A stretch of 64,000 nucleotides of DNA from Octopus sinensis (lineage: Eukaryota): assembly GCF_006345805.1 (NCBI RefSeq), contig NC_043001.1, positions 96,968,001-97,032,000 on the forward strand, written 5' to 3'. The notes under the pieces were generated by a model that saw nothing but the letters and a program-made list of their open reading frames with translations, was not told the origin of the DNA and did not search any database. Made by a program: the position numbers and the translations under genes. Shown piece after piece: positions 3,102 to 64,000 of the stretch; position 1 is the first letter of the stretch; the number at the start of each line of letters is the position of its first letter.

Positions 3102-3106
<5 letters not shown>

Positions 3107-3167
3107 TTAAAGCAGCAGAAAATTCAACAAAACCTGTTACTCTGAATTTTCTGCTGCTTTAAATATA
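3102..3167. repeat. Perfect 25-bp inverted repeat (hairpin) with 16-nt spacer
   Basis: tatatttaaagcagcagaaaattca (3102-3126) is the exact reverse complement of tgaattttctgctgctttaaatata (3143-3167). Confidence 0.95.
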
Positions 3168-16389: not shown

Positions 16390-18240
16390 ACATTATTATA
16401 GTTGGTGGAGGCTCGTTTTCCATGGGTTCGCATATGAGATTTGAGCCCAGCAAAGGACAGGTATGGTCAGTCACAAACTTATTGTCATTCAGCTTATTCA
16501 CAGCGAAATAAAAATCATTTAGCGTTGGTTCAAATGCCGTCTCTTCTATAATTGGAAGGTGTTCGATTTTTTTCTATCGTCCTCATGTCAGTGGATGATG
16601 ATTTATTCAAAAGTGAAGGAAATATTCTACCAAGCGCTTATGAATAGAAGCGGTGTCAGTTAGAAGCAAACATCCTTTTGCTGTTCTCAGTGGGGTTATT
16701 GAAGAAGGTTTTGGGCCATATACCGCCTTAACATAACAGTACAAACCATCGGCATCATTTCTATCAGCTGCTCTTTGTGCCCCTTTTGCTCTATCATTCC
16801 ATCATTCCTCTTTAATTTTCCTTAGAGCAGTCTGCAATTTCCTTTTCAGCTTTCTATAAGATTCGTTTGAGTTGGGTTTCAAGGACTGAGAAAGAAGTGT
16901 ATTGCTTAAGTTTTGTTGTTCTAAAAGTAGATCATGAATTACTACTGATCTGAGAACCAGTCACTGGACTTACGTGATTTAAATCCCACTGACGAACTTC
17001 CAGCCTAAAATATTCCCATAGATTGTTTGGGAGAAGATTGATACTTTCTATAGTATCTTGGAATCTTAGCAAGATGTTTGATAATTTAAAGTTTGCAACA
17101 TTAACTTTTGGGAACCCTAAAACCAGACTGTCGATTCTTAGGCATTATCGAAAAATCTGTTTCCACGCAGTAGACGATGGTCAGTCCAGCTCTCTGCCCG
17201 TCTCATGACCCGAATGCTAGAAACGTCTTTCATATCACGTTTTCTGTTCAGAATATAATCTATGAGATGCCATTACTTAGTCTTGGGTACATCCAGGTGG
17301 TTTTATATTTAGTTTTCTACTTAAACAGTGTGATGGTAACAACCAGAGTATTCTCAGTACAAACCGTCAAAAGATCTACTCCATTTTTATTACATTTTCC
17401 ACTCCCATGTTGACTTAAAACAGGCCATGAAACGTAGTCCTTCCCAACTCTTGCATTGAAACCTCCCAATATGACTAGCTTGTCAGAAATTGGCACTTTC
17501 CTCAATAATTGTGGTAGATCATCATAAAACTGTCCTACAGTTTCATAAGAATCGGACATTGTTGGTTTGGTGCATAAATACTGACAACGGTAAGAAACCT
17601 ACCTTTCGTCAGTTTAATACAGCATGACATGATCCGTTCAGATATACCACTTAGAAGCTCTGCAATGGAGGATACTAATGTATTCTTGAGAGCAAACTCA
17701 ACACCAGATTGCCTACGCTGACTCTTAGGTAGGCCTCTTCAAAAGATAGTATATCCATAAGTAGGTTAATTTACTTCACTCTCACCAGAGAGATGAGTTT
17801 CAGAGAGCGCAACTATATCAAGGGAATATTTCTTAAGCTCACATGCAATAAGTGCAGTACGCCTTTCTGGCATCTTGTTGAAATTATCATCAAGAAATGA
17901 GCGCACATTCCAACAGCCAAAATTCAAAGGATGTTTATTTTTACTTCTTCTGTTTAACCACAGTGCCAGGATGACGACCGGGCTCAGCCTGTAATAAACT
18001 GGGACACCTACCGAACCAAAACTATTGGCCCAAGAAGACTTTGTGTGTGACATGAAAATTGACAAAACCAGGAACTTCTAAGGCCTCGGCTTTTATTTCG
18101 GAGATTTCCCTCTCCTAGGTAGATTACCAACCAAGGTTACAGAGCTGCCCATAAGATAAGCTATCCCGTTTCAGACACCAAACCGACACTGAAGAACTCT
18201 ATAGAATGATCAAATATCATTCCGGTGACCGATGCGGAGT
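16390..18240 (-). mobile_element. RTE-clade LINE, degenerate: 5' UTR, APE endonuclease, linker and C-terminal motif, with the RT domain missing
   Basis: Minus-strand peptides NFGCWNVRS...ERRTALIACELKKYSLDIVALSETHL; LVILGGFNARVGKD...HGSGKCNKNGVDLLTVC; AQRAADRNDADGLYCYVKAVYGPK...PLRTAKGCLLLTD; and terminal SFAGLKSHMRTH (16457->16422). All are typical of RTE/BovB-like ORFs. Stops and frameshifts are present. Confidence 0.9.
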
Positions 18241-19588: not shown

Positions 19589-20494
19589 TGATAAAAAAAG
19601 GTAATGTATATAAATGTATATATATAAATACCTTTTTATCAATATATGTATATATATATTATTGATAAAAAGGTAATGTATATATAATATATATGTATAT
19701 ATTTATATGTATGTATATGTGGTGTATAATATAATATAATGTATATATGTATATATATATAATGTATATATATGTGTATATATCATGTAGGTATATATGC
19801 ATATATACTATACACATATATATATATAATATATATAATATATTATATATATATCCATATATATATACATAGAAATCATATCTGCACACACATACATACA
19901 TATATATGTATTTTTATATCTATACATCTATAAATGTGTTTATGTATCTATATGTATATGAATTTATACATGCATATATATATATATAAATATATACATA
20001 TCTATAAATATATGCAGAAGTACATACATATGTATATTATGTATATTATATGTACGTATGTAAGCATGCGTGCCGTGCATTGTATATGGGTGTATATAAC
20101 TCTGTAGGCATATATATATGTATGTATATTTATTCTTGCGCAGTTATTTACACCCACCTCATTGAATTATTTTTTAAAAATAAAATTTCTTCAAAATAAT
20201 CTTTGTTTACTTTTGTGATTTTTTTTTTGTTTTTACTTTACTATTTCGTTGCTTTTTGTACATCCAAGTAAATTCCTTTCGGCAGAAATGGTTCGATTCT
20301 GCCATATTTCTTCGAACGTATTCTATTGTTTAGTTTTGTAGAATTGATGACTTTAAGAAACGCATATAATATTCATCAGAAAATTTTATATTCTTCAGAA
20401 ATTTTCATAAGCTGGAAGTATTAAGAAATAATGATAAATAACGATAAAATAAAATTACATTGCGCTTGGGAAAAAATTGTTTTTATTTTTTGTT

Positions 20495-21147: not shown

Positions 21148-22441
21148 CTAATTTTTAAATTAGAATTGTCAGCATGCCTGGCGAAATACTTGATGATATT
21201 TCATCATTCTCTACTCCCTGAGTTCGAATACTATGAATGTTGAGCACTAGATCGATATAATCACCTGCCTTCTCCCACAAATTCCAGGCTTTGCTCCTAG
21301 ATTAGAGAGGATTATGATGGTTTTGTTATTTTTCTTCAAACTACTAAGAAAATATTCACGAGATTTTGTGTTTCTTCGTATATTTTCCACAATTTTCTCT
21401 TTACTTATATAGGAATTTTGTTGTTTACACTTTTAGTGAATTTGAATAAACTGCCTTATAAAACAACTATTATTTCGTTTTACGACGAACCCATATATCC
21501 AGTGTTTATGTAAACATCTATATTTTCCTTTAAAAAATAACATGGATTTCTTGTAAAGCTTGCACTCTGTAGAGGTGAATGAGAAGTTGCTAGTAATGCT
21601 AAGAATGCAGGGAAACTTTCGCTTGGTTTATGTCTTACAAAGACAAAAAATATATTTATAGAAATTGAAGATGCGAAGAATATGGCAACGGAATGCTGCT
21701 AGATTCATTTCTAATTTTACACAGACTGCAGGAAGAAAAAAAAAATTTACTATCACTAATGCAGCGGCAATAAAAATGTGAACAACGAAATGGACAGCAG
21801 GAAGAAGGACAACAACAGAACTGTCAAGAAACAAGACATACAGAAACAACAAAAGCATCGACGTCAACAACGACAAGTAATAAACGGATAAGTATCTTGT
21901 TTTGAAACTAGACATGGAAGGCATTTACACAGTAGTATTAGGAAGAATATCGGGATTGTGCAACCCGGAGTGAAGATGCGTTGTCCTGGAAGAGTAAACC
22001 CAATCTGAAAAGGAATTATGAGTGATTATAATTTTCGAAGTTATAAAATGCAGGCAAAAGTTGTTTGTTGCATGTCAACTCCAGCTCAAATAGACAAATG
22101 TCTTGCTGAAGTTGCTTTTATATACTTAATCCATCCATATGTAAACAGCACGGTATTGGCAGCCAACTACATCAGCGAGGAAAGTAAGTGATAAATGATC
22201 ACAACCCTTTGAAGCTCCCAGCATTTTGTTTCGCTGCCACTGTACAGCCGATTTTAGAAAACTGACCTCAAAATTACCCCCATTGTGCCACCTGACATTG
22301 AGGCAACCTGAACGATGGTGATTGAATAAAAGGTAGAGATAATTAGACTGAAATCCACCAATCCCAGATCTTGTGGAAAGAACTTCGTGGATCCCTGTTT
22401 TGCATGCTGCATACATACATACATACATACATACATACATA

Positions 22442-22473
<32 letters not shown>

Positions 22474-22496
22474 ATCTATATATATAGATATTATAT

Positions 22497-22570
<74 letters not shown>

Positions 22571-22574
22571 TATA

Positions 22575-22727
22575 GGCGCAGGAGTGGCTGTGTGGTAAGT
22601 AGCTTGCTAACCAACCACATGTTTCCGGGTTCAGTCCCACTGCAAGTGTCTTCTGCTATAGCCTCTGGCCGACCAAAGCCTTGTGAGTGGATTTTGTAGA
22701 CGGAAACTGAAAGAAGCCTGTCGTATA
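22575..22727 (+). mobile_element. SINE family A, 5' half (short internal deletion in the CORE-like part)
   Basis: ggcgcaggagtggctgtgtggtaagtagcttgctaaccaaccacatg...gggttcagtcccactgc...gacggaaactgaaagaagcc. Confidence 0.85.
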
Positions 22728-22843: not shown

Positions 22844-23722
22844 TGTATATATATATGTAGAAAAAATATTTTCTTATCGTAAAATGTATGAAAATACCCC
22901 GTTCGTTCAGTTTCGCTCTCTCTCGGGAAACTCAGCCATGGATGTTTCGAGTCTATTTACTCTTGTCGATTAGATGTACGTAAGGGAGGCAAAACTGAAC
23001 GAATTGATAAAGCTTATAGCTTTATATATAATTCACCCAACACATTGACTTATTTGCGCCAGTAGATAGCTCGATCGAGAAAAATATCGGAGTAACTGCG
23101 CTAAGGAGTGTTTGCATATAATCACAATTTAGGTTAGTTGAAATATGTTTGTCACATATTTCAACTACTAAATGCAAATACACCGCAGTTGGGGTATATA
23201 TATATATATATAATATATTATATTATATATATATATATATATATATACATATGTATATACATAAGTATGTATGTATATATACATCTACGCATAGAAGATG
23301 GAAGAGTATGTGAGCAGAGCTGTCTGGTCATACGTAGAAATCCAAATGACACTTCTGCCGTATAAAAAACAGTTCACAGTTATGTATCTTAAGTTTGGGA
23401 ACACATGTTCTGAACATCAATCTCTATTGCTCATACAAATACCTCCTCCGGCAGGTACACGCATCGTGACACCGGAACAACAACGAGAAATATCATACTT
23501 AATAAGCATAAATTCTACTTCAGCCATAGAAAACTTATAACAGGAAAAGCAGAAAGAAGCCAAACGGTTCACTATACATCGTAAGAATTTTCAGAAATTT
23601 TCAAAATTTTCTTCGAATGAGGAAGGTGCGAAGGACGACTGGAAAAATTAGTTGCGAAAACAGAGTTGAATGATGAGAAAGGGCAGTGAGTAATGAGTAA
23701 GCAGCTAATTGATCCAAGAGCT

Positions 23723-23822
23723 NNNNNNNNNNNNNNNNNNNNNNNNNNNNNNNNNNNNNNNNNNNNNNNNNNNNNNNNNNNNNNNNNNNNNNNNNNNNNN
23801 NNNNNNNNNNNNNNNNNNNNNN
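23723..23822. other. Assembly gap (100 N)
   Basis: Exactly 100 Ns, a common placeholder for a gap of unknown size. Adjacency across it is unverified. Confidence 0.99.
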
Positions 23823-32930: not shown

Positions 32931-33939
32931 TATTCCTTTTGTACACCACCTGTCTTCGTCTTTTATTTTTTTCGTAAACTCTCCCTATTTATATATATAT
33001 AAATATATAGGTTAAATATGTTCTAATACTGTCTCGATTGATGTGATGTAGTTTCAGATTTGAAAACTAAACAATAACATGGCAATAATTGCATATAGTC
33101 TGGCCTTTGCATTGCAGGTCGTTGTAAAGATTTTTCTGGGCGATATAAAAGTGCTGTCACGAGATTTTGACATATGAATATAAAATGCGAACTAAAAGTG
33201 ACGAGCAAATGTCGAAATCATGCATTATATTGTTGTAATTATTGGGAATGATGTGTGTATTCGTACACACATCATTCCAACGAGTCTGTGGAAGAGTGTT
33301 AGCCGTATGACAATAAGACTTGGAACTTCCTTTCTGTTCAGAAAATGTAGTGTCTTTTTCCCCTTATATTCAGCCAATAAAATACACAAACACACATGGA
33401 TGCAACTCACATACATACACCCTCACAAGCTTGCATACATAACCATGCATACACAGAGCTATAAACGCACAGACAGAGATAAGAGAAAAGAATGTTTCGT
33501 ATTTATACATGTATATACACACAAGGAAATATAAACCAATATAACGGCATACACAATGTCACAAAGAAACGCACACACATATGGAAATATTTTGATCTGG
33601 ATTGTGTACGTACGAATGTTGTAATGTGTATACGTATGATCGTGTTTCTGTATGTGTGTGTGTATGTGATACATAAGCGTGTGTAGGTGGCATAAATATT
33701 TATGCAAACATTCATTGTTTTGTATACACGTGTGTTAATACGAAGGAGCGGGCACGTGTATGTATAACTCCGGCATTGTCTGTCTATATGAGTATGTGTG
33801 TGTGTGTGTGTGCGCGCGCGCATGTGTGTATATGTGTGTATGCGCGCGTATTTGTATGAGTGTGTGTATGCGCGCGTGTTTGCATGAATGTGTGAGAGAA
33901 AAATATATATATAACCATATATATGTGTGTGCATACATA

Positions 33940-41901: not shown

Positions 41902-42293
41902 CATTATTTATATTATTTACATTTGACGGATATTTGTCCTCATCTTCTTTGTTAACAGTCAACAACAAACAAGATGAGGACATTGTTAACAACAAGCAAG
42001 AAGAGGACAAATATCTGTCGAATGTAAATAATGTAAACAATGTACATAATTCCTCATCTCTTATCTAGAGAACTGTATTATCTAATCGGTATGGAACCGA
42101 CATTAGGCTTCAATGGAGACATATAGAGAAACTCCATGAAAATCTAACTCGTCTTTCAAACCAACTAACTTAATAAAAAAATAATACTGTGTTAACAACA
42201 AACAAGATGAGGACAACTATCCGCCGGATGTAAATAATGTAAATAATGTAAATAATGTACATAATTCCTCATCTTTTAAATACAGAACTGTAT
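41902..42293 (+). mobile_element. 392-bp insertion flanked by a 13-bp TSD; probable Penelope-like element fragment (inverted plus direct pseudo-LTR pieces)
   Basis: agccacttctata at 41889-41901 and 42294-42306. 41902-41946 is an inverted copy of 41998-42042. Direct repeats lie at 41985-42078 and 42191-42293. Internal peptide RTVLSNRYGTDIRLQWRHIEKLHENLTRLSNQLT recalls PLE ORF N-termini. Confidence 0.7.
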
Positions 42294-49088: not shown

Positions 49089-49160
49089 GGTAGTATAGCT
49101 CAGTGGTTCAGCATTTGATTGCAGATCGAGAGATCCTCAGTTCGAATCTGAGTGTCCTCT
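49089..49160 (+). tRNA. tRNA-Cys(GCA), probably a pseudogene
   Basis: GGTAGTA TA GCTC AGTGGTT CAGC A TTTGA TT GCA GA TCGAG AGATC CTCAG TTCGAAT CTGAG TGTCCTC T. 72 nt, perfect T stem, U73 discriminator, T5 run at 49179-49183. The acceptor stem has 2 mismatches and 3 G-U pairs; the D stem has a C-C mismatch. Confidence 0.8.
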
Positions 49161-50388: not shown

Positions 50389-52692
50389 TTTTTTATTTTT
50401 TTATTACAGTTTTTCATGTGTATAGGGTGATTATCTATAGATTTCTTCCCAGTTAGATACCTACATAGAATCATAGCGAAACTTATATAATAGATTTAAT
50501 TAGAATTAGAATGAGCTACGAGAGAATCAAATCCAGGGGTATAGGCGTCATTTATGTATGAAGGCATATGAACACAATGGATTATATACAAATGGTTTGT
50601 TATTCATTTCTAAAAACCAGTAAAATAGGGTGCTTTCAAATTGACTGCTAGAAGAATAAAGGAAAGGCTACATTGGATGGTATTGGTGAATACATCCTCG
50701 GTGGTATAATTTAATCACGAAACACAACGATAAATCCTTTTTATAACATTACCTTGTTAATATTTACATAGCTGTATATCTAAATGCATGTACATATTTG
50801 TCTGTTTTTCAAATTCAGCTCAACATTGTTTGTAAAATTCGACCAAGTTGAAAGAGACGTGTGGCACGCATTGACGAATCCTACTCCATTTGTTTTTAGA
50901 ATGTGTTCCCTAGAGCCGGCAAATGCGACAAACTGAAAAACGTTGTTTAGCGTTAAGAGAGAGTGTAAATAAAAAAAGAGTAAATGTTATGAATCGACTA
51001 GTCGGTCCTTAATTTATCGATCTATACGGTTGATAAATGAAAATGAAAAGCAAGTTGATATCCGTGGGATTTGAACCCAGGATTGATGGCAAGAAAAATA
51101 TTTACCTATACATAGCAAATTATTTGTTAAACGCTCTAGCAGCTCAGCTAATTGACCGACTAGAAACACACCGATACGTGTTCTTAGACAGACCGCCAAA
51201 TAAATACATAAAACCACGTACACACACTGATCTACGCAGGAATGTGTGAAAAGCTTAAAGCAATAATGTCTAATGAATGTTCAATTCAGATAAGACATTG
51301 TGACAGAACAATCTTTTGTTCATAAACGCCTGTGTATTCTTACTGATAAGACAGTGAAAAATCATTGATAAATAGAGGAACCCTTTAGCAGAATTACCGA
51401 AGTATGAATAAAAAAAAAGATGATAAATTATGATCCAATATTTCCAAAGATTGCAACATATCTTTTGGGATCTGCAAATCTAGCTGATTCATCTTTTATT
51501 ATCATTGATGTAATGTTTATTTCATGAAGTAATATTTTTTATTTTTTATTACAGTTTTTCATGTGTATAGGGTGATTATCTATAGATTTCTTCCCAGTTA
51601 GATACCTACATAGAATCATAGCGAAACTTATATAATAGATTTAATTAGAATTAGAATGAGCTACGAGAGAATCAATCCAGGGGTATAGGCGTCATTTATG
51701 TATGAAGGCATATGAACACAATGGATTATATACAAATGGTTTGTTATTCATTTCTAAAAACCAGTAAAATAGGGTGCTTTCAAATTGACTGCTAGAAGAA
51801 TAAAGGAAAGGCTACATTGGATGGTATTGGTGAATACATCCTCGGTGGTATAATTTAATCACGAAACACAACGATAAATCCTTTTTATAACATTACCTTG
51901 TTAATATTTACATAGCTGTATATCTAAATGCATGTACATATTTGTCTGTTTTTCAATTCAGCTCAACATTGTTTGTAAAATTCGACCAAGTTGAAAGAGA
52001 CGTGTGGCACGCATTGACGAATCCTACTCTATTTGTTTTTAGAATGTGTTCCCTAGAGCCGGCAAATGCGACAAACTGAAAAACGTGTTTAGCGTTAAGA
52101 GAGAGTGTAAATAAAAAAAGAGTAAATGTTATGAATCGACTAGTCGGTCCTTAATTTATCGATCTATACGGTTGATAAATGAAAATGAAAAGCAAGTTGA
52201 TATCCGTGGGATTTGAACCCAGGATTGATGGCAAGAAAAATATTTACCTATACATAGCAAATTATTTGTTAAACGCTCTAGCAGCTCAGCTAATTGACCG
52301 ACTAGAAACACACCGATACGTGTCTTAGACAGACCGCCAAATAAATACATAAAACCACGTACACACACTGATCTACGCAGGAATGTGTGAAAAGCTTAAA
52401 GCAATAATGTCTAATGAATGTTCAATTCAGATAAGACATTGTGACAGAACAATCTTTTGTTCATAAACGCCTGTGTATTCTTACTGATAAGACAGTGAAA
52501 AATCATTGATAAATAGAGGAACCCTTTAGCAGAATTACCGAAGTATGAATAAAAAAAAAGATGATAAATTATGATCCAATATTTCCAAAGATTGCAACAT
52601 ATCTTTTGGGATCTGCAAATCTAGCTGATTCATCTTTTTATTATCATTGATGTAATGTTTATTTCATGAAGTAATATTTTTTATTTTTATTT
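50389..52692. repeat. Near-identical ~1.14-kb direct tandem duplication
   Basis: Copy 1 is 50389-51534 and copy 2 is 51535-52676. Offset is 1145 near the start and 1142 at the end. Both ends carry tttttta-ttttt(t)att microhomology. Confidence 0.97.
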
Positions 52693-53204
52693 TACTTTTT
52701 TTTCAAATTTCACATAATTGCATTAACAATAACGAATATATAAATAATAAAGCGACATAAACGAAAAATGAATTGTTAAAAATAATTTTCTGGAACTTGA
52801 AAACAACTTCAGCCTTCTGAATCTATTAAGAATAAATAGATTTTATATGAAAAATAGCTGATTTAGGTAAGGTAACGCATACGAAATGTTTTCTTTATAA
52901 TCTCGCAATTAATATAGAATAAGAAGTATCAGTTTTCCCAGTTTTTTTTCTTCATATGCGACGCGAAGAAGGAAATGTGAGGTGAGACAAATAAAAATCT
53001 TGCTAAGAGAGTGACAAATATTTGAAACGATATCAAGAGTAGTACCTTGCAGACAAATAAAACAACTTGGCTTGAAGTGGCCTGAGCTACTCCAAAGGAA
53101 CTGTCTTGATGACAAACTGTTTATAATAGTAATGTTTAAGACGAACACAAAGGTGTAATGAAAGTGATGTATTGAGTTAAGTATCCAAATACACTTGAAA
53201 CATA

Positions 53205-57321: not shown

Positions 57322-57418
57322 TTATATGTATATGCTTTTCATACACACACACACACACAGAGGTATGTATGCATATATATATGTATATATATATATATAT
57401 AGAAAGAGAGAGAGATAG

Positions 57419-57503
<85 letters not shown>

Positions 57504-58294
57504 GCAGGCAGATATAGATATAGATATAGATAGAAAGACAGACAGACAGATATGTAGATAGATAGACAGATAGACAGCTAGATAGCTAGATAGACAAACA
57601 AACAGATAGACAGATAGATAGATAAATAGATAGATATACACGGGGGGGACGTGTATATCATAATATACAAATAATGTGAGGACATAACAGTTGAAATAAG
57701 GGATTAAACTAAACGTGAAATGCCTAATTTCAATTGTTTCATAAAAATGCTGGCGGGCTTGATGTCTTTGTATCATTCTTTAGATGTTTCAGGAGAAACT
57801 AATAGTATTTCAAACGGTAAAATGAAAAAATAAAAAATAGCTACATTTATGAAAGAGCTCAAAAATACATACCAAATATCTGCGACTGCGATATTCAGAG
57901 CACAAAAATTAAAAGAGTATGATGTAGTTTAAGCAGTTACATCGGGAAAAAAAAAGAGATAAGAATAAATATATTGTTTTAGTCTTGCAGTGAAATAAGA
58001 CATATAGTAAGAAGACAGACTGTAGGAGTATGAGTTCCTAAGTTGTCCGTAAGCACGTTAAGGGATGGCCGAGATATATGTGTACGCGAAATAACCTGAC
58101 ATGAGAATGAAAAACAGAGCCAAAGCGAACGTAGAAATGTTAGAAGCTGAGAACGGAAAGGGCAGATTAAAAGGAAAGAAATGAAGAATTGGAAAGTTAA
58201 ATATAGAGATATACTTAGAAGAAAGATATAGAAGAAAAAGATGAACTTCATTTAGGCCCAGAATTTCAAGTTTATAAGCGAGAAAACAAGAAAC

Positions 58295-58745
58295 TGTTGG
58301 GTTGGCAACTAAATTCCCGCCGTTTTACTAAATTAAAAAAAAATAACAAATAACAATTGATTAATCAATAATGTATTCACACTTGTTGTTTGCAACTTTT
58401 TTCCAACGTTCAACAAGATTTTCAATACCTCGTTGGTAGAAAACACCCGATTTCCACTCGGAAAATTGATCCAACCAAGCTCTAGAGTTCTGCATCAAGC
58501 ATTTGAAAGAGATTGAAAGAGGTGGAAATCCGTTGGTACCAAATCAGGAGAGTACATCGGGTGTTGCAACACTTCCCAGTCATGTGTTTGAATGGCTTCC
58601 TTGGTAATATTAAAGTACAGGCACCATTTTACGTCGCCAGTAACGATTCGATAAAGAAATTGTTGCTTCTGTCCATGAGTTCAGCGGTGACAAGCAAGCA
58701 AACCAGCGAAGATTGTGGCTCGTTGATTTTTGACGTTGTCATGCA
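58295..58745 (-). mobile_element. Mariner (mellifera-like TIR) remnant with in-frame internal deletion
   Basis: TIR-like tgttgggttggcaactaa at 58295. Minus peptides FLYRIVTGDVKWCLYFN|ITKEAIQTHDWEVLQHPMYSPDLVPTDFHLFQSL and FYQRGIENLVERWKKVA. Confidence 0.88.
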
Positions 58746-59385
58746 TGTTTTATTTAATGGTGATATGTTAGGCGGTTTCTTAGACATTGGTGTCTTCTAG
58801 AATGCAGGCGACTTGTATACGTACTCGTTTGCCCATTTAGAAATTGATTAATTTTACCTTAAACGGTTGATTGCATGTTAACTACCTATTAAAATCTAAC
58901 GTAGATTTTATCTTTAAATTTTAAAATATATTATAAATATATAATTTCACTCAAACAAACATTATTCACTGCTGAATTATTTGGTTATTAACACGTGGTC
59001 GAAATAAACGAAACCATATTTTTGAGATTTTATTCAGTATATAAGTACGGACAGCGTATTTATGGTGTGAAACTGTTCTGTTCCTTGTATATGTATTTTG
59101 TTCGTGTTTATATTGAATGATTTGGTTATATTACACCGATGATAGAAAAAGAGATTATCCTTTAATCTTGAAATCAATTGATAGGTAATTGAACCGTTTC
59201 TTTAATCTGTTTCGTTTATTTGCACGAGTACGGTGCGTGTTTCATTTCATGGTGATGTTAGGTAGTTTCTTAGATATTGGCGTTTTCTTCTAGCATGTAG
59301 GCGACTTGTATACGTATTCTTTTGCTAGGTCTGTATAATATTGTTTCAGAAAATAATAATGGTAGACACTTAACTTACTCAAGAA

Positions 59386-60330
59386 ATGAAGAGGCCTGCT
59401 TTTATTGTGGTTAGGAAAGCTGAACATAGTGATTTAAAAATAAATCGAGTTTTAAATGTTGCCATATCTTTCGTCAACAAAGTCTCTAAGAAGCTACAAA
59501 CTGAAGATGGAACCGTATCATCACTATGAAAGCATAAGAAGCATTCTAAGCGCTCTGAAATTATCAGAACACTTGAATTTATCCAGCAAGTCTAATAGAC
59601 CATTGATTACAATCCCAGAAAGTCCATGAGGTTAATAGCAAAAGATCACCTTGAGTTCGAAGGAACAGTCAGAAATGATTTCCATAAAGATATCAGATAT
59701 AAGACATATGATAAGGAAAGGCTAGTTTCTTAGAAAAAGCAAAAGAAAATCACTACATCAGATCTAAAGCGCTCTTAAACAAACTGAAAAATCCACCAGA
59801 AGAAGATTTGATTTGGTTTTTCTCAAACGAGGAAAAATACGGCCAAGGTCAAAAAGTTAACAGAAGAAATGACTGATGGTTATGTGCAGACTGTTCTGAA
59901 GTTCGAAGCATTATGCGTCGAAAATTTCCTGCAATTGTCATAGTTTTAAGAGTCATCAGCAATGAAAAACATGCCTCCTTACTTCTTCCCACAAGACTGA
60001 AGTGTTAACTCTGCCTCCTACATTGAAGTCCTGGAAATAATTGTATAGTCCTGGATAGACAATGTATGAAATGGAAGGCCATATGTGTTTCAGTAAGACT
60101 CTGCACTATCACAGATTGCTCTGGTAACACAGGATCACATAATCCCTAATATTTGGACTCCTAAGTCCCCAGATCTCAATCCATTGGGCTATTACAAGTG
60201 CAGCGTTGTTGAGAGAGAGAGGTCAAGGAACACGCCCATAACACCAAAGATTCTATGAAAGCTGCCATAGTCAAAATAATGCCCAGAATGAACCAGGACG
60301 ACTTGATTCGAGCATGTAAATGATTTAGAT
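59386..60330 (+). mobile_element. Tc1/mariner-superfamily (maT/DD37D-like) transposase pseudogene
   Basis: MKRPAFIVVRKAEHSDLKINRVLNVAISFVNKV...; IWFFSNEE...QKVNRRND*WLCAD; YVFQ*DSA; WTPKSPDLNPLGYY. Many stops and frameshifts. Confidence 0.85.
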
Positions 60331-60593
60331 CTCAGGCTTTTTTGCTGTTTTGAAGAGGAGAATTTTGTTTTACACTTTCTTTTTCTTTCAAGACGTGGGA
60401 GAGAGAGAGAGAAAGAAAAGCAATGAGGGGAATAGAGAGAATGTGAAAGAGTGAGAAAGAGAGAGAGAGGGAGAGAGAGAGGACAATCAAGAAAGAGGAG
60501 AAAATAATAAAGGATGGAGAAAAATAGATAGATAACCGGACAGATAGCTAGCTAGATAAATATACAGACAGGAAGAGAACTAGCTGTATATAA

Positions 60594-60625
<32 letters not shown>

Positions 60626-61456
60626 TCAGGGGGAGGGGGGTTGTTTTGAATTTTATGTGGTCATATCTGTGAAACTTCATTACAAAGCATTTTTCTTTTT
60701 TCTTCTTTTTCCTTTCCATTTTATACCTACCAACGTATTTGTAAATAAACACATTTTCTCAGCAGAGCTGGTGACCTTTTAAATATGTCAATCTTAGGAA
60801 GTAGGTTGGAAAAATAAGAAAAAGAGGGGAGAGTGAGGTCATCATTGAAAAATAAACAGAGTATAAAGTCAAAGACTTATGAAAATGTATATTCATTTAC
60901 ACTTGTATAGTCAAGTCTCATATTCTGTGTTATTCATTGTTTTGCCTGAACAAACATTAAATATCAGTACAATATTCATAAATTAAGAAAATATTGACAG
61001 AATATATAAAAGAATTTGGTACTATTTATAATTCAATCTATTCTCTATGTATATTTAATCAAACATTATAAATCAGTTTTGTATGTGTATTGTATATTTA
61101 ACTGGAAGCTACTCAGTAGGATGTAGAATATATAATAAAGCAGGCGTTGCTTAAATATATTTTTGAGTATCTCTCATCCTTTTGTAGGATTTCTTTTTCT
61201 TTTTCATGTTTGCTTGGATAAGATAATTCAAAACAGATCTCATTCACGAATTATTTTTCCAAGTAGCTACATTAGATATATTTCCTAATCAGTGGTAAAA
61301 TTATTCTAGTATCATTTCTCGAGTAAATGTAGGTTCTATAAGAACAACAGTTGTCAAAATCCCAATATTATATAAATATATGATCATTTATAAAGATGAG
61401 CATCACCTTATTAACATATGGGCCTCATTCAGAAACAAGAGTATTTCTGTAATATA

Positions 61457-62013
61457 AAGGTTTTCACTGCATCCATCATCATTACTATTAAAACAAAAAT
61501 GATAATAAAAATGTAGTTCTTCTGCTTCTCTTTTAGACATTTAATCCTGGAGCGAATTTTTTTATGAAATGTAGCTACATCGCCTTTCAGAATTTTGGGT
61601 TATCTCTTAAATATTTGTAAACGACAAAGATTCTGAACTTGCCTTCACCGCATAATTCTACATGCTTGCTCAGCGGAATCTTGCGCAATACCTCTATCTA
61701 TAGTAATATTTTCAGTATGCAGGAATACAACTGTTATGCACAATTTCTTGCATACTGAAAATATTACTATAGATAGAGGTATTGCGCAAGATTCCGCTGA
61801 GCAAGCATGTAGAATTATGCGGTGAAGGCAAGTTCAGAATCTTTGTCGTTTACAAATATTTAAGAGATAACCCAAAATTCTGAAAAGCGATGTAGCTACA
61901 TTTTATAAAAAAATTCGCTCCAGGATTAAATGTCTGAAAGAGAAGCAGAAGAACTACATTTTTATTATCATTTTTGTTTTAATAGTAATGATGATGGATG
62001 CAGTGAAAACCTT
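61457..62013. repeat. 557-bp near-perfect palindrome: 269-bp arms, 19-nt spacer
   Basis: 61457-61725 is the reverse complement of 61745-62013 with no indels and 4 mismatches (three G-T, one C-A). Confidence 0.98.
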
Positions 62014-62744
62014 GTATTCCTAACTGCATGATTTTATTTTATATTCCCGTCACTGAATTACCATCGCTCAGCATCTCTGGATTTTGAATTCCATGGACTC
62101 TTTACTTTATGCTGCTTTCTAATTGAGAATTACCGAATACGTACCAGGAATTCACTGTGATAGCCGTGCGATTCTCTGATTCCATATCTATACGATTCAT
62201 ATGTATATATATATATATATATATCAAAACAAAAAATCAAAACAACTCAATAGCGACAGAACCACTTAATGAGTGTCAAGAGAGACAATCTCTCGCAGAT
62301 TGTGGCTATTGAGTTTGTTTTGGCCCTTATTTCTAGTAATACCGTGCTGCAGATTGGTATTACTAGTAATGCTGAATAGCCCCATTTGTTTACTTTAGTG
62401 ACGTCGCTACTCAGCCTTTGTCAAAGGTAAGATTTTACTTTTATATATAATTTCTACAACTTTCTGCCTAATATCATTATCTCTCTCTATCCCTCTATAA
62501 TCCTCTATATTTCCTTTTTTCTCCTCCTTCTCTGCTGTCCCCGTTTGTCTTTGTTTCACTCTCTATTTTTCTTTCTCCTCACTTCCTTTACTTCGACCCC
62601 ATCCTCTCTCTTGACCCCTTTCCCCTCAATCTGTTGTTCACTCGTGACTACAGGCCACTTTCCTTGACTCGCTGTCTCTTCTTGATGGCACATCACCTAT
62701 CCGGACGTCATTTCACTCGCCTCTTGATATCTTTTTTCTCTTCT

Positions 62745-62880: not shown

Positions 62881-64000
62881 TAACTCCCCACAAATTTAAT
62901 ATTTTAAAAATTTCTGGATGCTGCTGTCTTATGAAGTCTTCATGTATTGTTAAAAGCACCAAACAGATAGTAATAAACAGTCGACAACTGAGGAAGAGTT
63001 AGCCTTCTTTTGGTATTTTATCCTGTACTTCTCTCTCGCTGTACGTTTATGTAATTTTCACTCATTGGTGATGTTCTGCATTTAATGTGTATTTTTTTCA
63101 TTTTGATTAGGTATATATAGGTAGATAATGATAACTCTGAATTATGTTATTGCTTTCCAAGCTTATATAATATAGATAATTCAGATCCTTTTAGAAATAA
63201 TGCGACAATACATCCTTACATATAATTATTACTTTTGTATGTATTTTCCTGTGTGTATGTCAGCATGGATTCTTCATTTATAAACTCATCAGCAAGTCCT
63301 TTAAACTTACAAAGAGGCACAAATTAGGAATCTCAATAACTCGGGGACTGCTTTTACGCTACTTTGGTGCACCGCAAATTCAGACGATTCAATGGATCTT
63401 ATGACCATCAGAATACGAAACAAGGTATGCAACAGTGAATGTAGAAATATAGATCGCAAACAACCTGGATATTGAATAGAGAAGTCTGTTTGACCTATCC
63501 AGAAATATTGAATGACAGGAATAGAGAATAATTATTAGTTTTGGATTTTTTTAAACATTTATATATGATGCAGAAATAAAGTACTCTCCATATTGGCTTT
63601 AGATAATATACCGATGTGTAAGAATTTTGGCTTTTGATCAAATCCTGTTTGTACAAACGAAATTATTGTCAATTTCCTCATCTCGTGTCTGTTTTCTAAG
63701 AAGAAAATCTTCTTTCAAAATGTTTTACTTGTCAAACTCAATATCATAGACGGCAAAAAAAAAAAAGTTATTGTCATTGGAACACCGATCGAAATGCCGA
63801 AAAATATTGATGACTGAAATGGGGCAAAACTATTACGAAACATTGCTGCACTTCAACAATATCTGAAAACCTATCCAATGTAGTCGTGACTTGAACATGA
63901 TCTGAAGGTGATTTAGTCTGGACAAACCGAATGTATAGTTGCTCAAACTTTTATAGATGTAAAAGTTTGGGCAACTATACATTCGGATTATCGGGTGAAG

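What the first reader, a model, noticed from the sequence alone, without database searches (positions are those of the whole stretch)
61457..62013. 557-bp near-perfect palindrome in non-repetitive-looking sequence
Seen: 269-bp arms, 19-nt loop, 98.5% identity, no indels. All 4 mismatches are transitions, and three give G-U pairs in plus-strand RNA. The arms match no repeat family seen in this window. Established: such structures form cruciforms and fragile sites in DNA, and long dsRNA that is a substrate for ADAR hyper-editing or Dicer (hairpin RNA/endo-siRNA loci). Inference: a recent inverted duplication that could act as a hairpin-RNA locus. Internal mismatches argue against, but do not exclude, a fold-back library artefact.
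Basis: partly seen in the sequence, partly recalled or inferred. Interest (0 to 1): 0.75.

Follow-up and report, generated by a model that had tools for sequence, protein, structure and literature searches.

The report
Young 557-bp palindrome in octopus-like DNA
A real, nearly perfect 557-base inverted duplication sits in transposon-rich non-coding DNA of what is most likely an octopus genome, and it looks like an ordinary recent copying accident of a kind reported to be common there, not a dedicated small-RNA gene.

Summary
The arms are 61457-61725 and 61745-62013 (269 nt each), with a 19-nt spacer. There are 4 mismatches, all transitions, and no indels. It is far beyond chance: RNA fold -463 kcal/mol, z = -50.

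The arms are unique in the window, have no open frame, and no frame matches any protein in a 5.8-billion-sequence database. No target-site duplication flanks them. The borders are sharp. An 8-10-nt patch at the right border is an inverted copy of the left-arm/spacer junction.

A LINE remnant in the window has its closest named relatives in Octopus bimaculoides, so the host is probably an octopod.

Best reading: a young local inverted duplication made by snap-back or template-switch DNA synthesis, with no evidence of a selected function.

If transcribed it would form 269 bp of dsRNA. In an octopus that is more likely an ADAR hyper-editing substrate than a Dicer/endo-siRNA hairpin, because molluscs are reported to have lost DICER2 and siAGO. 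Published work also reports that near-perfect local inverted repeats are unusually abundant in octopus, so this is probably one ordinary example.

Not testable here: copy number in the genome, read support and transcription.

The parts
61457..61725 (.). Left arm of the palindrome (269 nt, 67% A+T)
   Evidence: It is unique in the window. It has no tandem sub-repeats. The longest stop-free stretch is 56 codons.
61726..61744 (.). 19-nt spacer (hairpin loop), TACAACTGTTATGCACAAT, not self-complementary
61745..62013 (.). Right arm, reverse complement of the left arm with 4 transition mismatches and no indel
61721..61730 (.). AGGAATACAA, the last 5 nt of the left arm plus the first 5 nt of the spacer; inferred template of the patch at the right border
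   Evidence: an exact 10-nt inverted match between the two junction neighbourhoods. About 1% of random pairs of 30-mers from this window share such a match.
62012..62021 (.). TTGTATTCCT, the last 2 nt of the right arm plus 8 nt of the right flank; inferred second short templated inverted copy (TT microhomology plus 8 copied nt)
   Evidence: Reading it as a second snap-back round is my inference.

Best explanation
This is a genuine, evolutionarily young, local inverted duplication in transposon-rich non-coding DNA of a probable octopod genome. A 269-nt stretch was copied in reverse complement right next to itself, leaving a 19-nt spacer. The most likely mechanism is snap-back or template-switch synthesis during replication or break repair. 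In that model a 3' end primes on its own or the sister strand, copies back along the arm, and then rejoins the original template. The 8-10-nt patch at the right border, an inverted copy of the arm/spacer junction, is read as a second short round of the same process. The four transitions accumulated afterwards. The element shows no sign of being a gene or a transposon insertion and probably has no selected function. Its expected consequences are physical. At the DNA level it could form a hairpin or cruciform and so be fragile. If it lies in a transcript, it would form 269 bp of near-perfect dsRNA. In a cephalopod that dsRNA would be expected to be hyper-edited by ADAR rather than diced into endo-siRNAs. 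Shown here: the structure, its uniqueness in the window, the lack of coding content, the lack of a target-site duplication, and the junction homology. Inferred: the mechanism, the young age, the host, and every RNA-level consequence.
For: The borders are sharp and there is no larger degenerate palindrome around it; only GA-rich against TC-rich low-complexity matches were found. No copy of the arm exists elsewhere in the 64 kb. No target-site duplication of 2-11 nt lies at or near the ends, apart from a TAT/TAT pair one base outside them. The arms contain no tandem sub-repeats. The 10-nt inverted homology between the inner-left and outer-right junctions has a window-specific chance level of about 1%. 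No protein similarity was found in any frame. Rfam gives only sub-threshold, both-strand, structure-driven hits to perfect-hairpin miRNA families, for example mir-5014 at 72 bits against a gathering score of 101. For the host, the closest named relatives of the LINE endonuclease remnant are Octopus bimaculoides proteins at 65-68% identity, against 42-43% for a sponge and a starfish. The window also has other short non-repetitive perfect hairpins (23 stems of 12 nt or more, about 7 of them not microsatellite, against 0-1 in shuffles) and a 99% identical 1.15-kb tandem duplication. Young local copying events are therefore not isolated here. In the literature, octopus has 4.4e-3 of random 50-bp loci with a reverse match of at least 95% identity and 40 bp within 2 kb, reported as exceptionally high, and the strongest hyper-editing signal (PMC5625713). 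The same measure in this window is 0.87%, all of it due to this palindrome. Template switching is reported to create perfect hairpins (PMC8794818, PMC10710096; titles and abstracts seen). Fold-back templated inverted insertions at breaks are also reported (PMC11724301, abstract seen).
Against: There is no outgroup or empty allele, so the order of events and which arm is the original are unknown. At the two main switch points the microhomology is only 0-1 nt by my own reading of the junctions, so a simple microhomology-primed four-point switch is not clearly supported. Templated inverted insertions documented at breaks in yeast are mostly 5-34 bp (PMC11724301), much shorter than 269 nt. Genomic copy number was not testable, so a transposon family cannot be excluded. 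Read support was not testable. The host assignment rests on one degraded LINE.
Confidence: 0.6

Rival explanations
1. It is one copy of a palindromic non-autonomous DNA transposon (a MITE or foldback-like element) whose whole length is two long terminal inverted repeats. The comparison is the palindromic Harbinger-derived repeat of Xenopus, which folds on itself and is heavily edited.
For: The size (557 bp), A+T richness (67%) and near-complete self-complementarity fit this class. Such a repeat explains the high hyper-editing in frog, and the nature of the octopus inverted repeats was left open (PMC5625713). The neighbourhood holds transposon debris, including a mariner remnant at 58364-58680. 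A TAT/TAT direct repeat lies one base outside the inverted-repeat ends.
Against: No target-site duplication abuts the inverted-repeat ends for any length from 2 to 11 nt, and no palindromic TA or TTAA is included in them. TAT one base off is expected by chance in roughly one scan in five in this A+T-rich DNA (my estimate). There is no second copy or fragment in 64 kb, whereas the SINE-like family has 8 copies. There are no sub-terminal tandem repeats.
Confidence: 0.2
2. It is an assembly or library artefact: a fold-back chimeric molecule or a mis-resolved graph path that the assembler wrote as an inverted duplication. The four differences would then be heterozygous sites or consensus errors.
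For: The window is a scaffolded draft with a 100-N gap at 23723-23822. It also holds a 99% identical tandem duplication with seven 1-base gaps, which could be a false duplication. No independent assembly could be retrieved.
Against: The palindrome is short and internal. Unique non-palindromic sequence lies on both sides, about 2 kb to the right within the window and 61 kb to the left. From general knowledge, unsplit fold-back reads give palindromes that run to the end of a read or contig. The arms differ at four sites, all substitutions, with matching homopolymer lengths and no indels. That is the signature of real substitutions rather than long-read error, and a graph fold-back would give identical arms.
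Confidence: 0.08
3. It is a functional hairpin-RNA gene: either a Drosophila-type hpRNA diced into endo-siRNAs against a target gene, or a selected dsRNA or miRNA-like locus.
For: A 269-bp, 98.5% paired hairpin with a short loop is an ideal Dicer or ADAR substrate in principle. Three of the four mismatches are G:U on the plus strand.
Against: Mollusca are reported to have lost DICER2 and siAGO, and an oyster small-RNA library shows no endo-siRNA signature (PMC11114477). No frame of the arm matches any protein, and no homologous target lies in the window. Rfam hits are below gathering scores and occur on both strands. The G:U excess is not significant (p = 0.31). Nothing could be learned about transcription.
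Confidence: 0.05

Closest known systems
Template-switch or snap-back inverted duplications (short template-switch mutations that create perfect hairpins; fold-back templated insertions at double-strand breaks)
   Same: A reverse-complement copy lies immediately next to its source with a short spacer. There is no target-site duplication and the borders are sharp. A small extra templated patch sits at one junction.
   Different: The arm is 269 nt, whereas described short events are tens of nt (PMC11724301: mostly 5-34 bp). Microhomology at the main switch points is only 0-1 nt. No ancestral allele is available to prove the path.
Near-perfect local inverted repeats of the octopus genome that serve as ADAR hyper-editing substrates (Porath et al. 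2017, PMC5625713)
   Same: A reverse-oriented match of at least 95% identity lies within 2 kb, giving long, tight dsRNA if transcribed. The host is probably an octopod.
   Different: Editing and transcription at this locus were not tested. The paper did not describe individual octopus loci or their origin.
Palindromic MITEs, for example the roughly 200-bp palindromic Harbinger repeat of Xenopus tropicalis
   Same: Size class, A+T richness, and a whole-length fold-back with a short loop.
   Different: No target-site duplication at the ends, no second copy in 64 kb, and no recognisable terminal motif.
Drosophila hpRNA loci (endo-siRNA hairpins derived from inverted duplication of a target gene)
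   Same: A long inverted duplication able to give a several-hundred-bp hairpin RNA.
   Different: No detectable parent or target gene. The probable host phylum is reported to lack the Dicer-2/AGO2 arm of RNAi (PMC11114477).
Fragile DNA palindromes such as closely spaced inverted Alu pairs and AT-rich palindromic repeats
   Same: Long arms, high identity and a short spacer are the features that make palindromes most recombinogenic (PMC7999016). In that review, Alu pairs with a 12-bp spacer stall forks in eukaryotes while a 52-bp spacer does not.
   Different: The spacer here is 19 nt, between those two values. No evidence of breakage or polymorphism at this locus is available.

Membership tests
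Template-switch / snap-back inverted duplication | Reverse-complement copy adjacent to its source, with a short spacer and sharp borders | tested here: met
   269-nt arms and a 19-nt spacer. Complementarity falls to background immediately outside the arms.
Template-switch / snap-back inverted duplication | No target-site duplication | tested here: met
   no direct repeat of 2-11 nt abuts the ends. The only match is TAT/TAT, one base outside them.
Template-switch / snap-back inverted duplication | Microhomology or templated patches at the junctions | tested here: inconclusive
   a 10-nt inverted homology links the two junctions, with a window null of about 1%. The two main switch points share only 0-1 nt by my reading of the sequence.
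Template-switch / snap-back inverted duplication | An ancestral allele or orthologue with a single arm | not testable with these tools
   No eukaryotic genome collection was searchable by DNA. Exact-pattern scans of the available collections gave nothing homologous.
MITE / foldback transposon | Terminal inverted repeats, size under about 800 bp, A+T rich | tested here: met
   This is trivially met by any palindrome of this size.
MITE / foldback transposon | Target-site duplication flanking the element | tested here: not met
MITE / foldback transposon | Many dispersed copies in the genome | tested here: inconclusive
   There is no second copy in the 64-kb window. Genome-wide copy number is not testable. 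The protein database lacks even the window's multi-copy SINE-derived ORFs, so its silence says nothing about copy number.
Drosophila-type hpRNA / endo-siRNA locus | Long hairpin-forming inverted repeat | tested here: met
Drosophila-type hpRNA / endo-siRNA locus | Arms homologous to a target gene | tested here: not met
   No similarity in the window. No protein match in any frame. Untranslated or species-specific targets elsewhere in the genome could not be checked.
Drosophila-type hpRNA / endo-siRNA locus | Host has the siRNA Dicer and Argonaute | not testable with these tools
   The literature reports DICER2 and siAGO lost in Mollusca (PMC11114477). The host is assigned to octopods only through a LINE remnant.
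Drosophila-type hpRNA / endo-siRNA locus | 21-22-nt small RNAs from the arms | not testable with these tools
   No expression data were available.
ADAR hyper-editing substrate | Long, nearly perfect intramolecular dsRNA | tested here: met
   265 of 269 positions paired, or 268 of 269 with G:U on the plus strand.
ADAR hyper-editing substrate | Transcribed, with clustered A-to-G mismatches in RNA reads | not testable with these tools
   No RNA-seq data were available.
Known RNA families (Rfam), including miRNA precursors | Score at or above the family gathering threshold | tested here: not met
   One search found nothing at gathering scores in the region. One search gave only sub-threshold hits on both strands, for example mir-5014 at 72 against 101 bits.
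Fold-back read / assembly artefact | Identical arms, and a palindrome that runs to a contig end | tested here: not met
   four mismatches between the arms. Unique flanks lie on both sides within the window. Whether the contig ends soon after 64000 is unknown.
Fold-back read / assembly artefact | No reads spanning both arms and both flanks | not testable with these tools
   No reads were available.

The most novel reading that the evidence does not exclude
The locus is one visible member of a large, still uncharacterised population of young palindromes in octopod genomes. These would be made either by unusually active long-range snap-back or template-switch synthesis, or by an undescribed palindromic transposon family. 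Together they would supply the near-perfect dsRNA behind the exceptional ADAR hyper-editing load of octopus. The other short perfect hairpins in this window would be smaller products of the same process.
Probability: 0.2. Interest if true: 0.5.

Novelty: new member of a known kind. Interest (0 to 1): 0.25.

Why it matters
As a single locus it matters little. It is a clean example of a young inverted duplication. It would be useful as a test case for palindrome handling by assemblers. It would also be useful as a positive control for hyper-editing pipelines, if it proves to be transcribed. The wider question it touches is why octopus genomes carry so many near-perfect local inverted repeats (PMC5625713), and whether these arise by template switching or by a palindromic transposon. 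A genome-wide census of such loci could answer that by recording their ends, spacers, junction patches and ages.

Tried and rejected
1. Independent assemblies of the locus. Exact-product look-ups of four window ORFs found nothing on record. The ORFs were 61406-61540(-), 62157-62309(+), 57342-57776(-) and 22129-22620(-).

2. Protein similarity of the palindrome. All stop-free pieces of 22 aa or more from six frames of 61330-62140, with two exact duplicates between the arms removed, were concatenated and searched. There was no hit at E <= 1e-3.

3. The same approach for ORFs of 52.8-64 kb plus the longest non-repetitive ORFs of the window. There was no hit. These included SINE-derived ORFs that must be multi-copy in the genome. 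The database therefore holds no ORF calls from this species' non-coding DNA, and both negatives say nothing about copy number.

4. Exact-pattern scans with 22-25-mers from the arm.
- Metagenomes gave 0 and then 1 match.
- The single match, L001, is a G+C-rich, probably bacterial contig sharing only 23 nt, which is chance.
- Prokaryotic genomes gave 0 and viral contigs gave 0.

5. A larger, older palindrome around the core. Only GA-rich (60.4-60.6 kb) against TC-rich (62.45-62.64 kb) low-complexity similarity was found, so this idea was rejected.

6. Rfam. Only structure-driven sub-threshold miRNA-family hits on both strands were found, so these were rejected.

7. Target-site duplications for every offset and length. 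Only TAT/TAT one base outside the ends was found.

8. Tandem sub-repeats in the arms, as in foldback elements. None were found.

9. A second Tc1-like transposase remnant at 59.7-60.3 kb, suspected from a remembered motif. Neither Pfam nor PDB sequences supported it.

10. Strand inference from the three G:U mismatches. Rejected as not significant with four mismatches.

Full report
**Observation**

- The arms are 61457-61725 and 61745-62013 (269 nt each), separated by 19 nt (TACAACTGTTATGCACAAT).
- There are four mismatches and no indel: 61534T/61936G, 61566G/61904T, 61584C/61886A and 61722G/61748T.
- All four are transitions. In a plus-strand transcript three would be G:U and one C:A.
- Outside the arms complementarity drops at once to background.
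- The 591-nt stretch folds into a single uninterrupted hairpin. As RNA it is -463 kcal/mol against -116 +/- 7 for dinucleotide shuffles (z = -50). As DNA it is -313 kcal/mol (z = -56).
- It is the longest inverted repeat in the window by a wide margin in quality.
- Once self-complementary (TA)n microsatellites are masked, it is the only reverse match of at least 95% identity and 40 bp within 2 kb.

The transitions-only and three-G:U remarks are true but carry no statistical weight (p about 0.2 and 0.31).

**What the arms are not**

- The arm has no second copy or fragment anywhere in the 64 kb.
- It has no internal tandem repeats.
- It has no reading frame open for more than 56 codons.
- A concatenate of the stop-free pieces from six frames of 61330-62140 found nothing among 5.8 billion proteins.
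- Rfam gives nothing at gathering scores. With permissive thresholds it gives only sub-threshold hits on both strands to families whose models are simply perfect hairpins.
- No direct repeat of 2-11 nt abuts the ends, and no palindromic TA or TTAA is included in them. The only match is TAT/TAT one base outside the inverted repeat, which is unremarkable in this A+T-rich DNA.
- There is no larger degenerate palindrome around it.

**Context**

The window is eukaryotic, 33% G+C, packed with microsatellites, and has one 100-N scaffold gap at 23723-23822.
- It carries a frameshifted LINE endonuclease remnant at 17320-18077(-) (Pfam Exo_endo_phos).
- It carries a mariner Mos1-like transposase remnant at 58364-58680(-) (E = 8e-20 against PDB Mos1).
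- It carries a SINE-like family with eight copies next to a tRNA-like Rfam hit.
- The closest named relatives of the LINE remnant are Octopus bimaculoides proteins at 65-68% identity. The next named ones are a sponge and a starfish at 42-43%.

I therefore treat the source as probably an octopod. This is an inference from one degraded element. No exon was recognised near the palindrome, so whether it lies in an intron or between genes is unknown.

**Junctions and origin**

The 10 nt AGGAATACAA at 61721-61730 are the last 5 nt of the left arm plus the first 5 nt of the spacer. They recur as their reverse complement TTGTATTCCT at 62012-62021, the last 2 nt of the right arm plus the first 8 nt of the right flank. 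About 1% of random 30-mer pairs from this window share a match of 10 nt or more, so this is suggestive rather than proof.

A simple account follows, and it is inference.
1. A 3' end that had reached the end of the spacer snapped back and copied the left arm in reverse complement for 269 nt.
2. It dissociated and re-primed through the TT/AA dinucleotide at the arm/spacer junction.
3. It copied 8 more nt and then rejoined the original duplex at 62022.

Repeated short rounds of templated synthesis are described for break repair and for replication template switching (PMC11724301, abstract seen; PMC8794818, PMC10710096 and PMC7954356, abstracts seen).

Against a neat fit, the two main switch points share only 0-1 nt. 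Documented templated inverted insertions in yeast are mostly 5-34 bp.

Arm divergence is 4/269 = 1.5%. Without gene conversion this gives an age of K/2µ. That would be a few million years at 1-5e-9 substitutions per site per year, but the rate is my assumption.

**Consequences**

At the DNA level, long arms, high identity and a short spacer are the properties that make palindromes recombinogenic (PMC7999016). A structure like this is therefore expected to be short-lived, which fits its youth.

At the RNA level nothing could be tested. The literature sets the priors.
- Porath et al. report that octopus has the strongest hyper-editing signal of the animals surveyed.
- They also report that 4.4e-3 of random 50-bp loci have a near-perfect reverse match within 2 kb, which they call exceptionally high (PMC5625713).
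- The same measure in this window is 0.87%, all of it from this palindrome. One such locus per 64 kb is therefore about what that genome-wide figure predicts.
- Formaggioni et al. report loss of DICER2 and siAGO in Mollusca and no endo-siRNA signature in an oyster library (PMC11114477).

If the palindrome is transcribed, ADAR hyper-editing is the likely fate. A Drosophila-style hpRNA role is unlikely.

**Rivals**

- Palindromic MITE. This is the main alternative (0.2). It fits the size and shape, and a palindromic repeat is known to explain frog hyper-editing. It lacks a target-site duplication and a second copy. Genome-wide copy number was not testable.
- Assembly artefact (0.08). This is made unlikely by unique flanks on both sides and by four substitutions with no indels. 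Only reads can exclude it.
- Selected hairpin-RNA gene (0.05). This has no positive evidence.

**What could not be done**

No eukaryotic DNA collection was searchable. Exact-pattern scans of metagenomic, prokaryotic and viral collections gave only one 23-nt chance match. Look-ups of window ORFs found no independent contigs.

The protein database lacks even ORFs from this window's multi-copy SINE. Its silence on the arms excludes a conserved coding origin but says nothing about copy number.

**Verdict**

The feature is real, clean and young. It is best explained as a local inverted duplication by template-switch or snap-back synthesis in probable octopod non-coding DNA. It is a new example of a known and, in this lineage, reportedly common kind of structure. 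Interest is low to moderate. The broader question of what generates the many near-perfect inverted repeats of octopus genomes is the part worth following.

Noticed in passing
window 63921-63992: A second, small near-perfect palindrome lies 1.9 kb downstream. It has 33-nt arms (3 mismatches) and a 6-nt loop. RNA fold z = -10 on the plus strand and -13.6 on the minus strand. Rfam gives only sub-threshold miRNA-family hits (MIR1878, let-7, mir-7563).
   Followed up: partly
window 62237-62323 and 62333-62366: Two further hairpins lie just right of the (TA)n tract. One has 20-nt arms around a 42-nt branched loop (z = -6.2). The other is a 12-bp stem (z = -2.4, not significant).
   Followed up: partly
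window 3102-3167, 19629-19675, 23135-23167, 33245-33278, 41935-41982: These are short, perfect or near-perfect inverted repeats in non-microsatellite sequence. Examples are 25-nt arms with a 16-nt loop at 3102-3167 and 15-nt arms with a 4-nt loop at 33245-33278. The window has 23 perfect stems of 12 nt or more, about 7 of them not microsatellite, against 0-1 in block shuffles. This may reflect frequent small template-switch events.
   Followed up: partly
window 50389-52702: A very young tandem duplication. Two units of about 1145 bp align over 1173 nt at 99.06% identity (4 mismatches, 7 one-base gaps). It is either real or a false duplication in the assembly.
   Followed up: partly
window 58364-58680 (-): A mariner (Mos1-like) transposase C-terminal remnant split over two frames. 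E = 8e-20 against PDB Mos1 transposase. Pfam did not detect it.
   Followed up: yes
window 17320-18077 (-): A frameshifted LINE apurinic-type endonuclease remnant (Pfam Exo_endo_phos). Its closest named relatives are Octopus bimaculoides proteins at 65-68% identity. This is the basis for the host inference.
   Followed up: yes
window 49089-49160 (+) and copies near 10.1-10.3, 12.2-12.4, 22.6-22.8, 31.0-31.2, 37.3-37.6, 37.8-38.0 and 45.9-46.0 kb: A tRNA-like Rfam hit (39.9 bits) that ARAGORN did not call. It adjoins a SINE-like repeat with eight copies at 69-84% identity in the window.
   Followed up: partly
window 60200-60650 and 62450-62700: A GA-rich microsatellite block lies left of the palindrome and a TC-rich block lies right of it. 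They are inverted relative to each other at 58-67% identity. This is low-complexity similarity only, not an extension of the palindrome.
   Followed up: yes
window 58742-58832 and 59234-59325: A direct repeat of about 92 nt at 83% identity, 490 nt apart, beside the mariner remnant. Its nature is unknown.
   Followed up: no
window 23723-23822: A run of exactly 100 N (a scaffold gap of conventional length), so the window comes from a scaffolded draft assembly.
   Followed up: no
L001 404-426 (contig JAAUYE010171398.1): A 23-nt exact match of the arm (61664-61686 and 61784-61806) inside a G+C-rich, probably bacterial, metagenomic contig. There is no similarity beyond those 23 nt, so it is a chance match.
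   Followed up: yes
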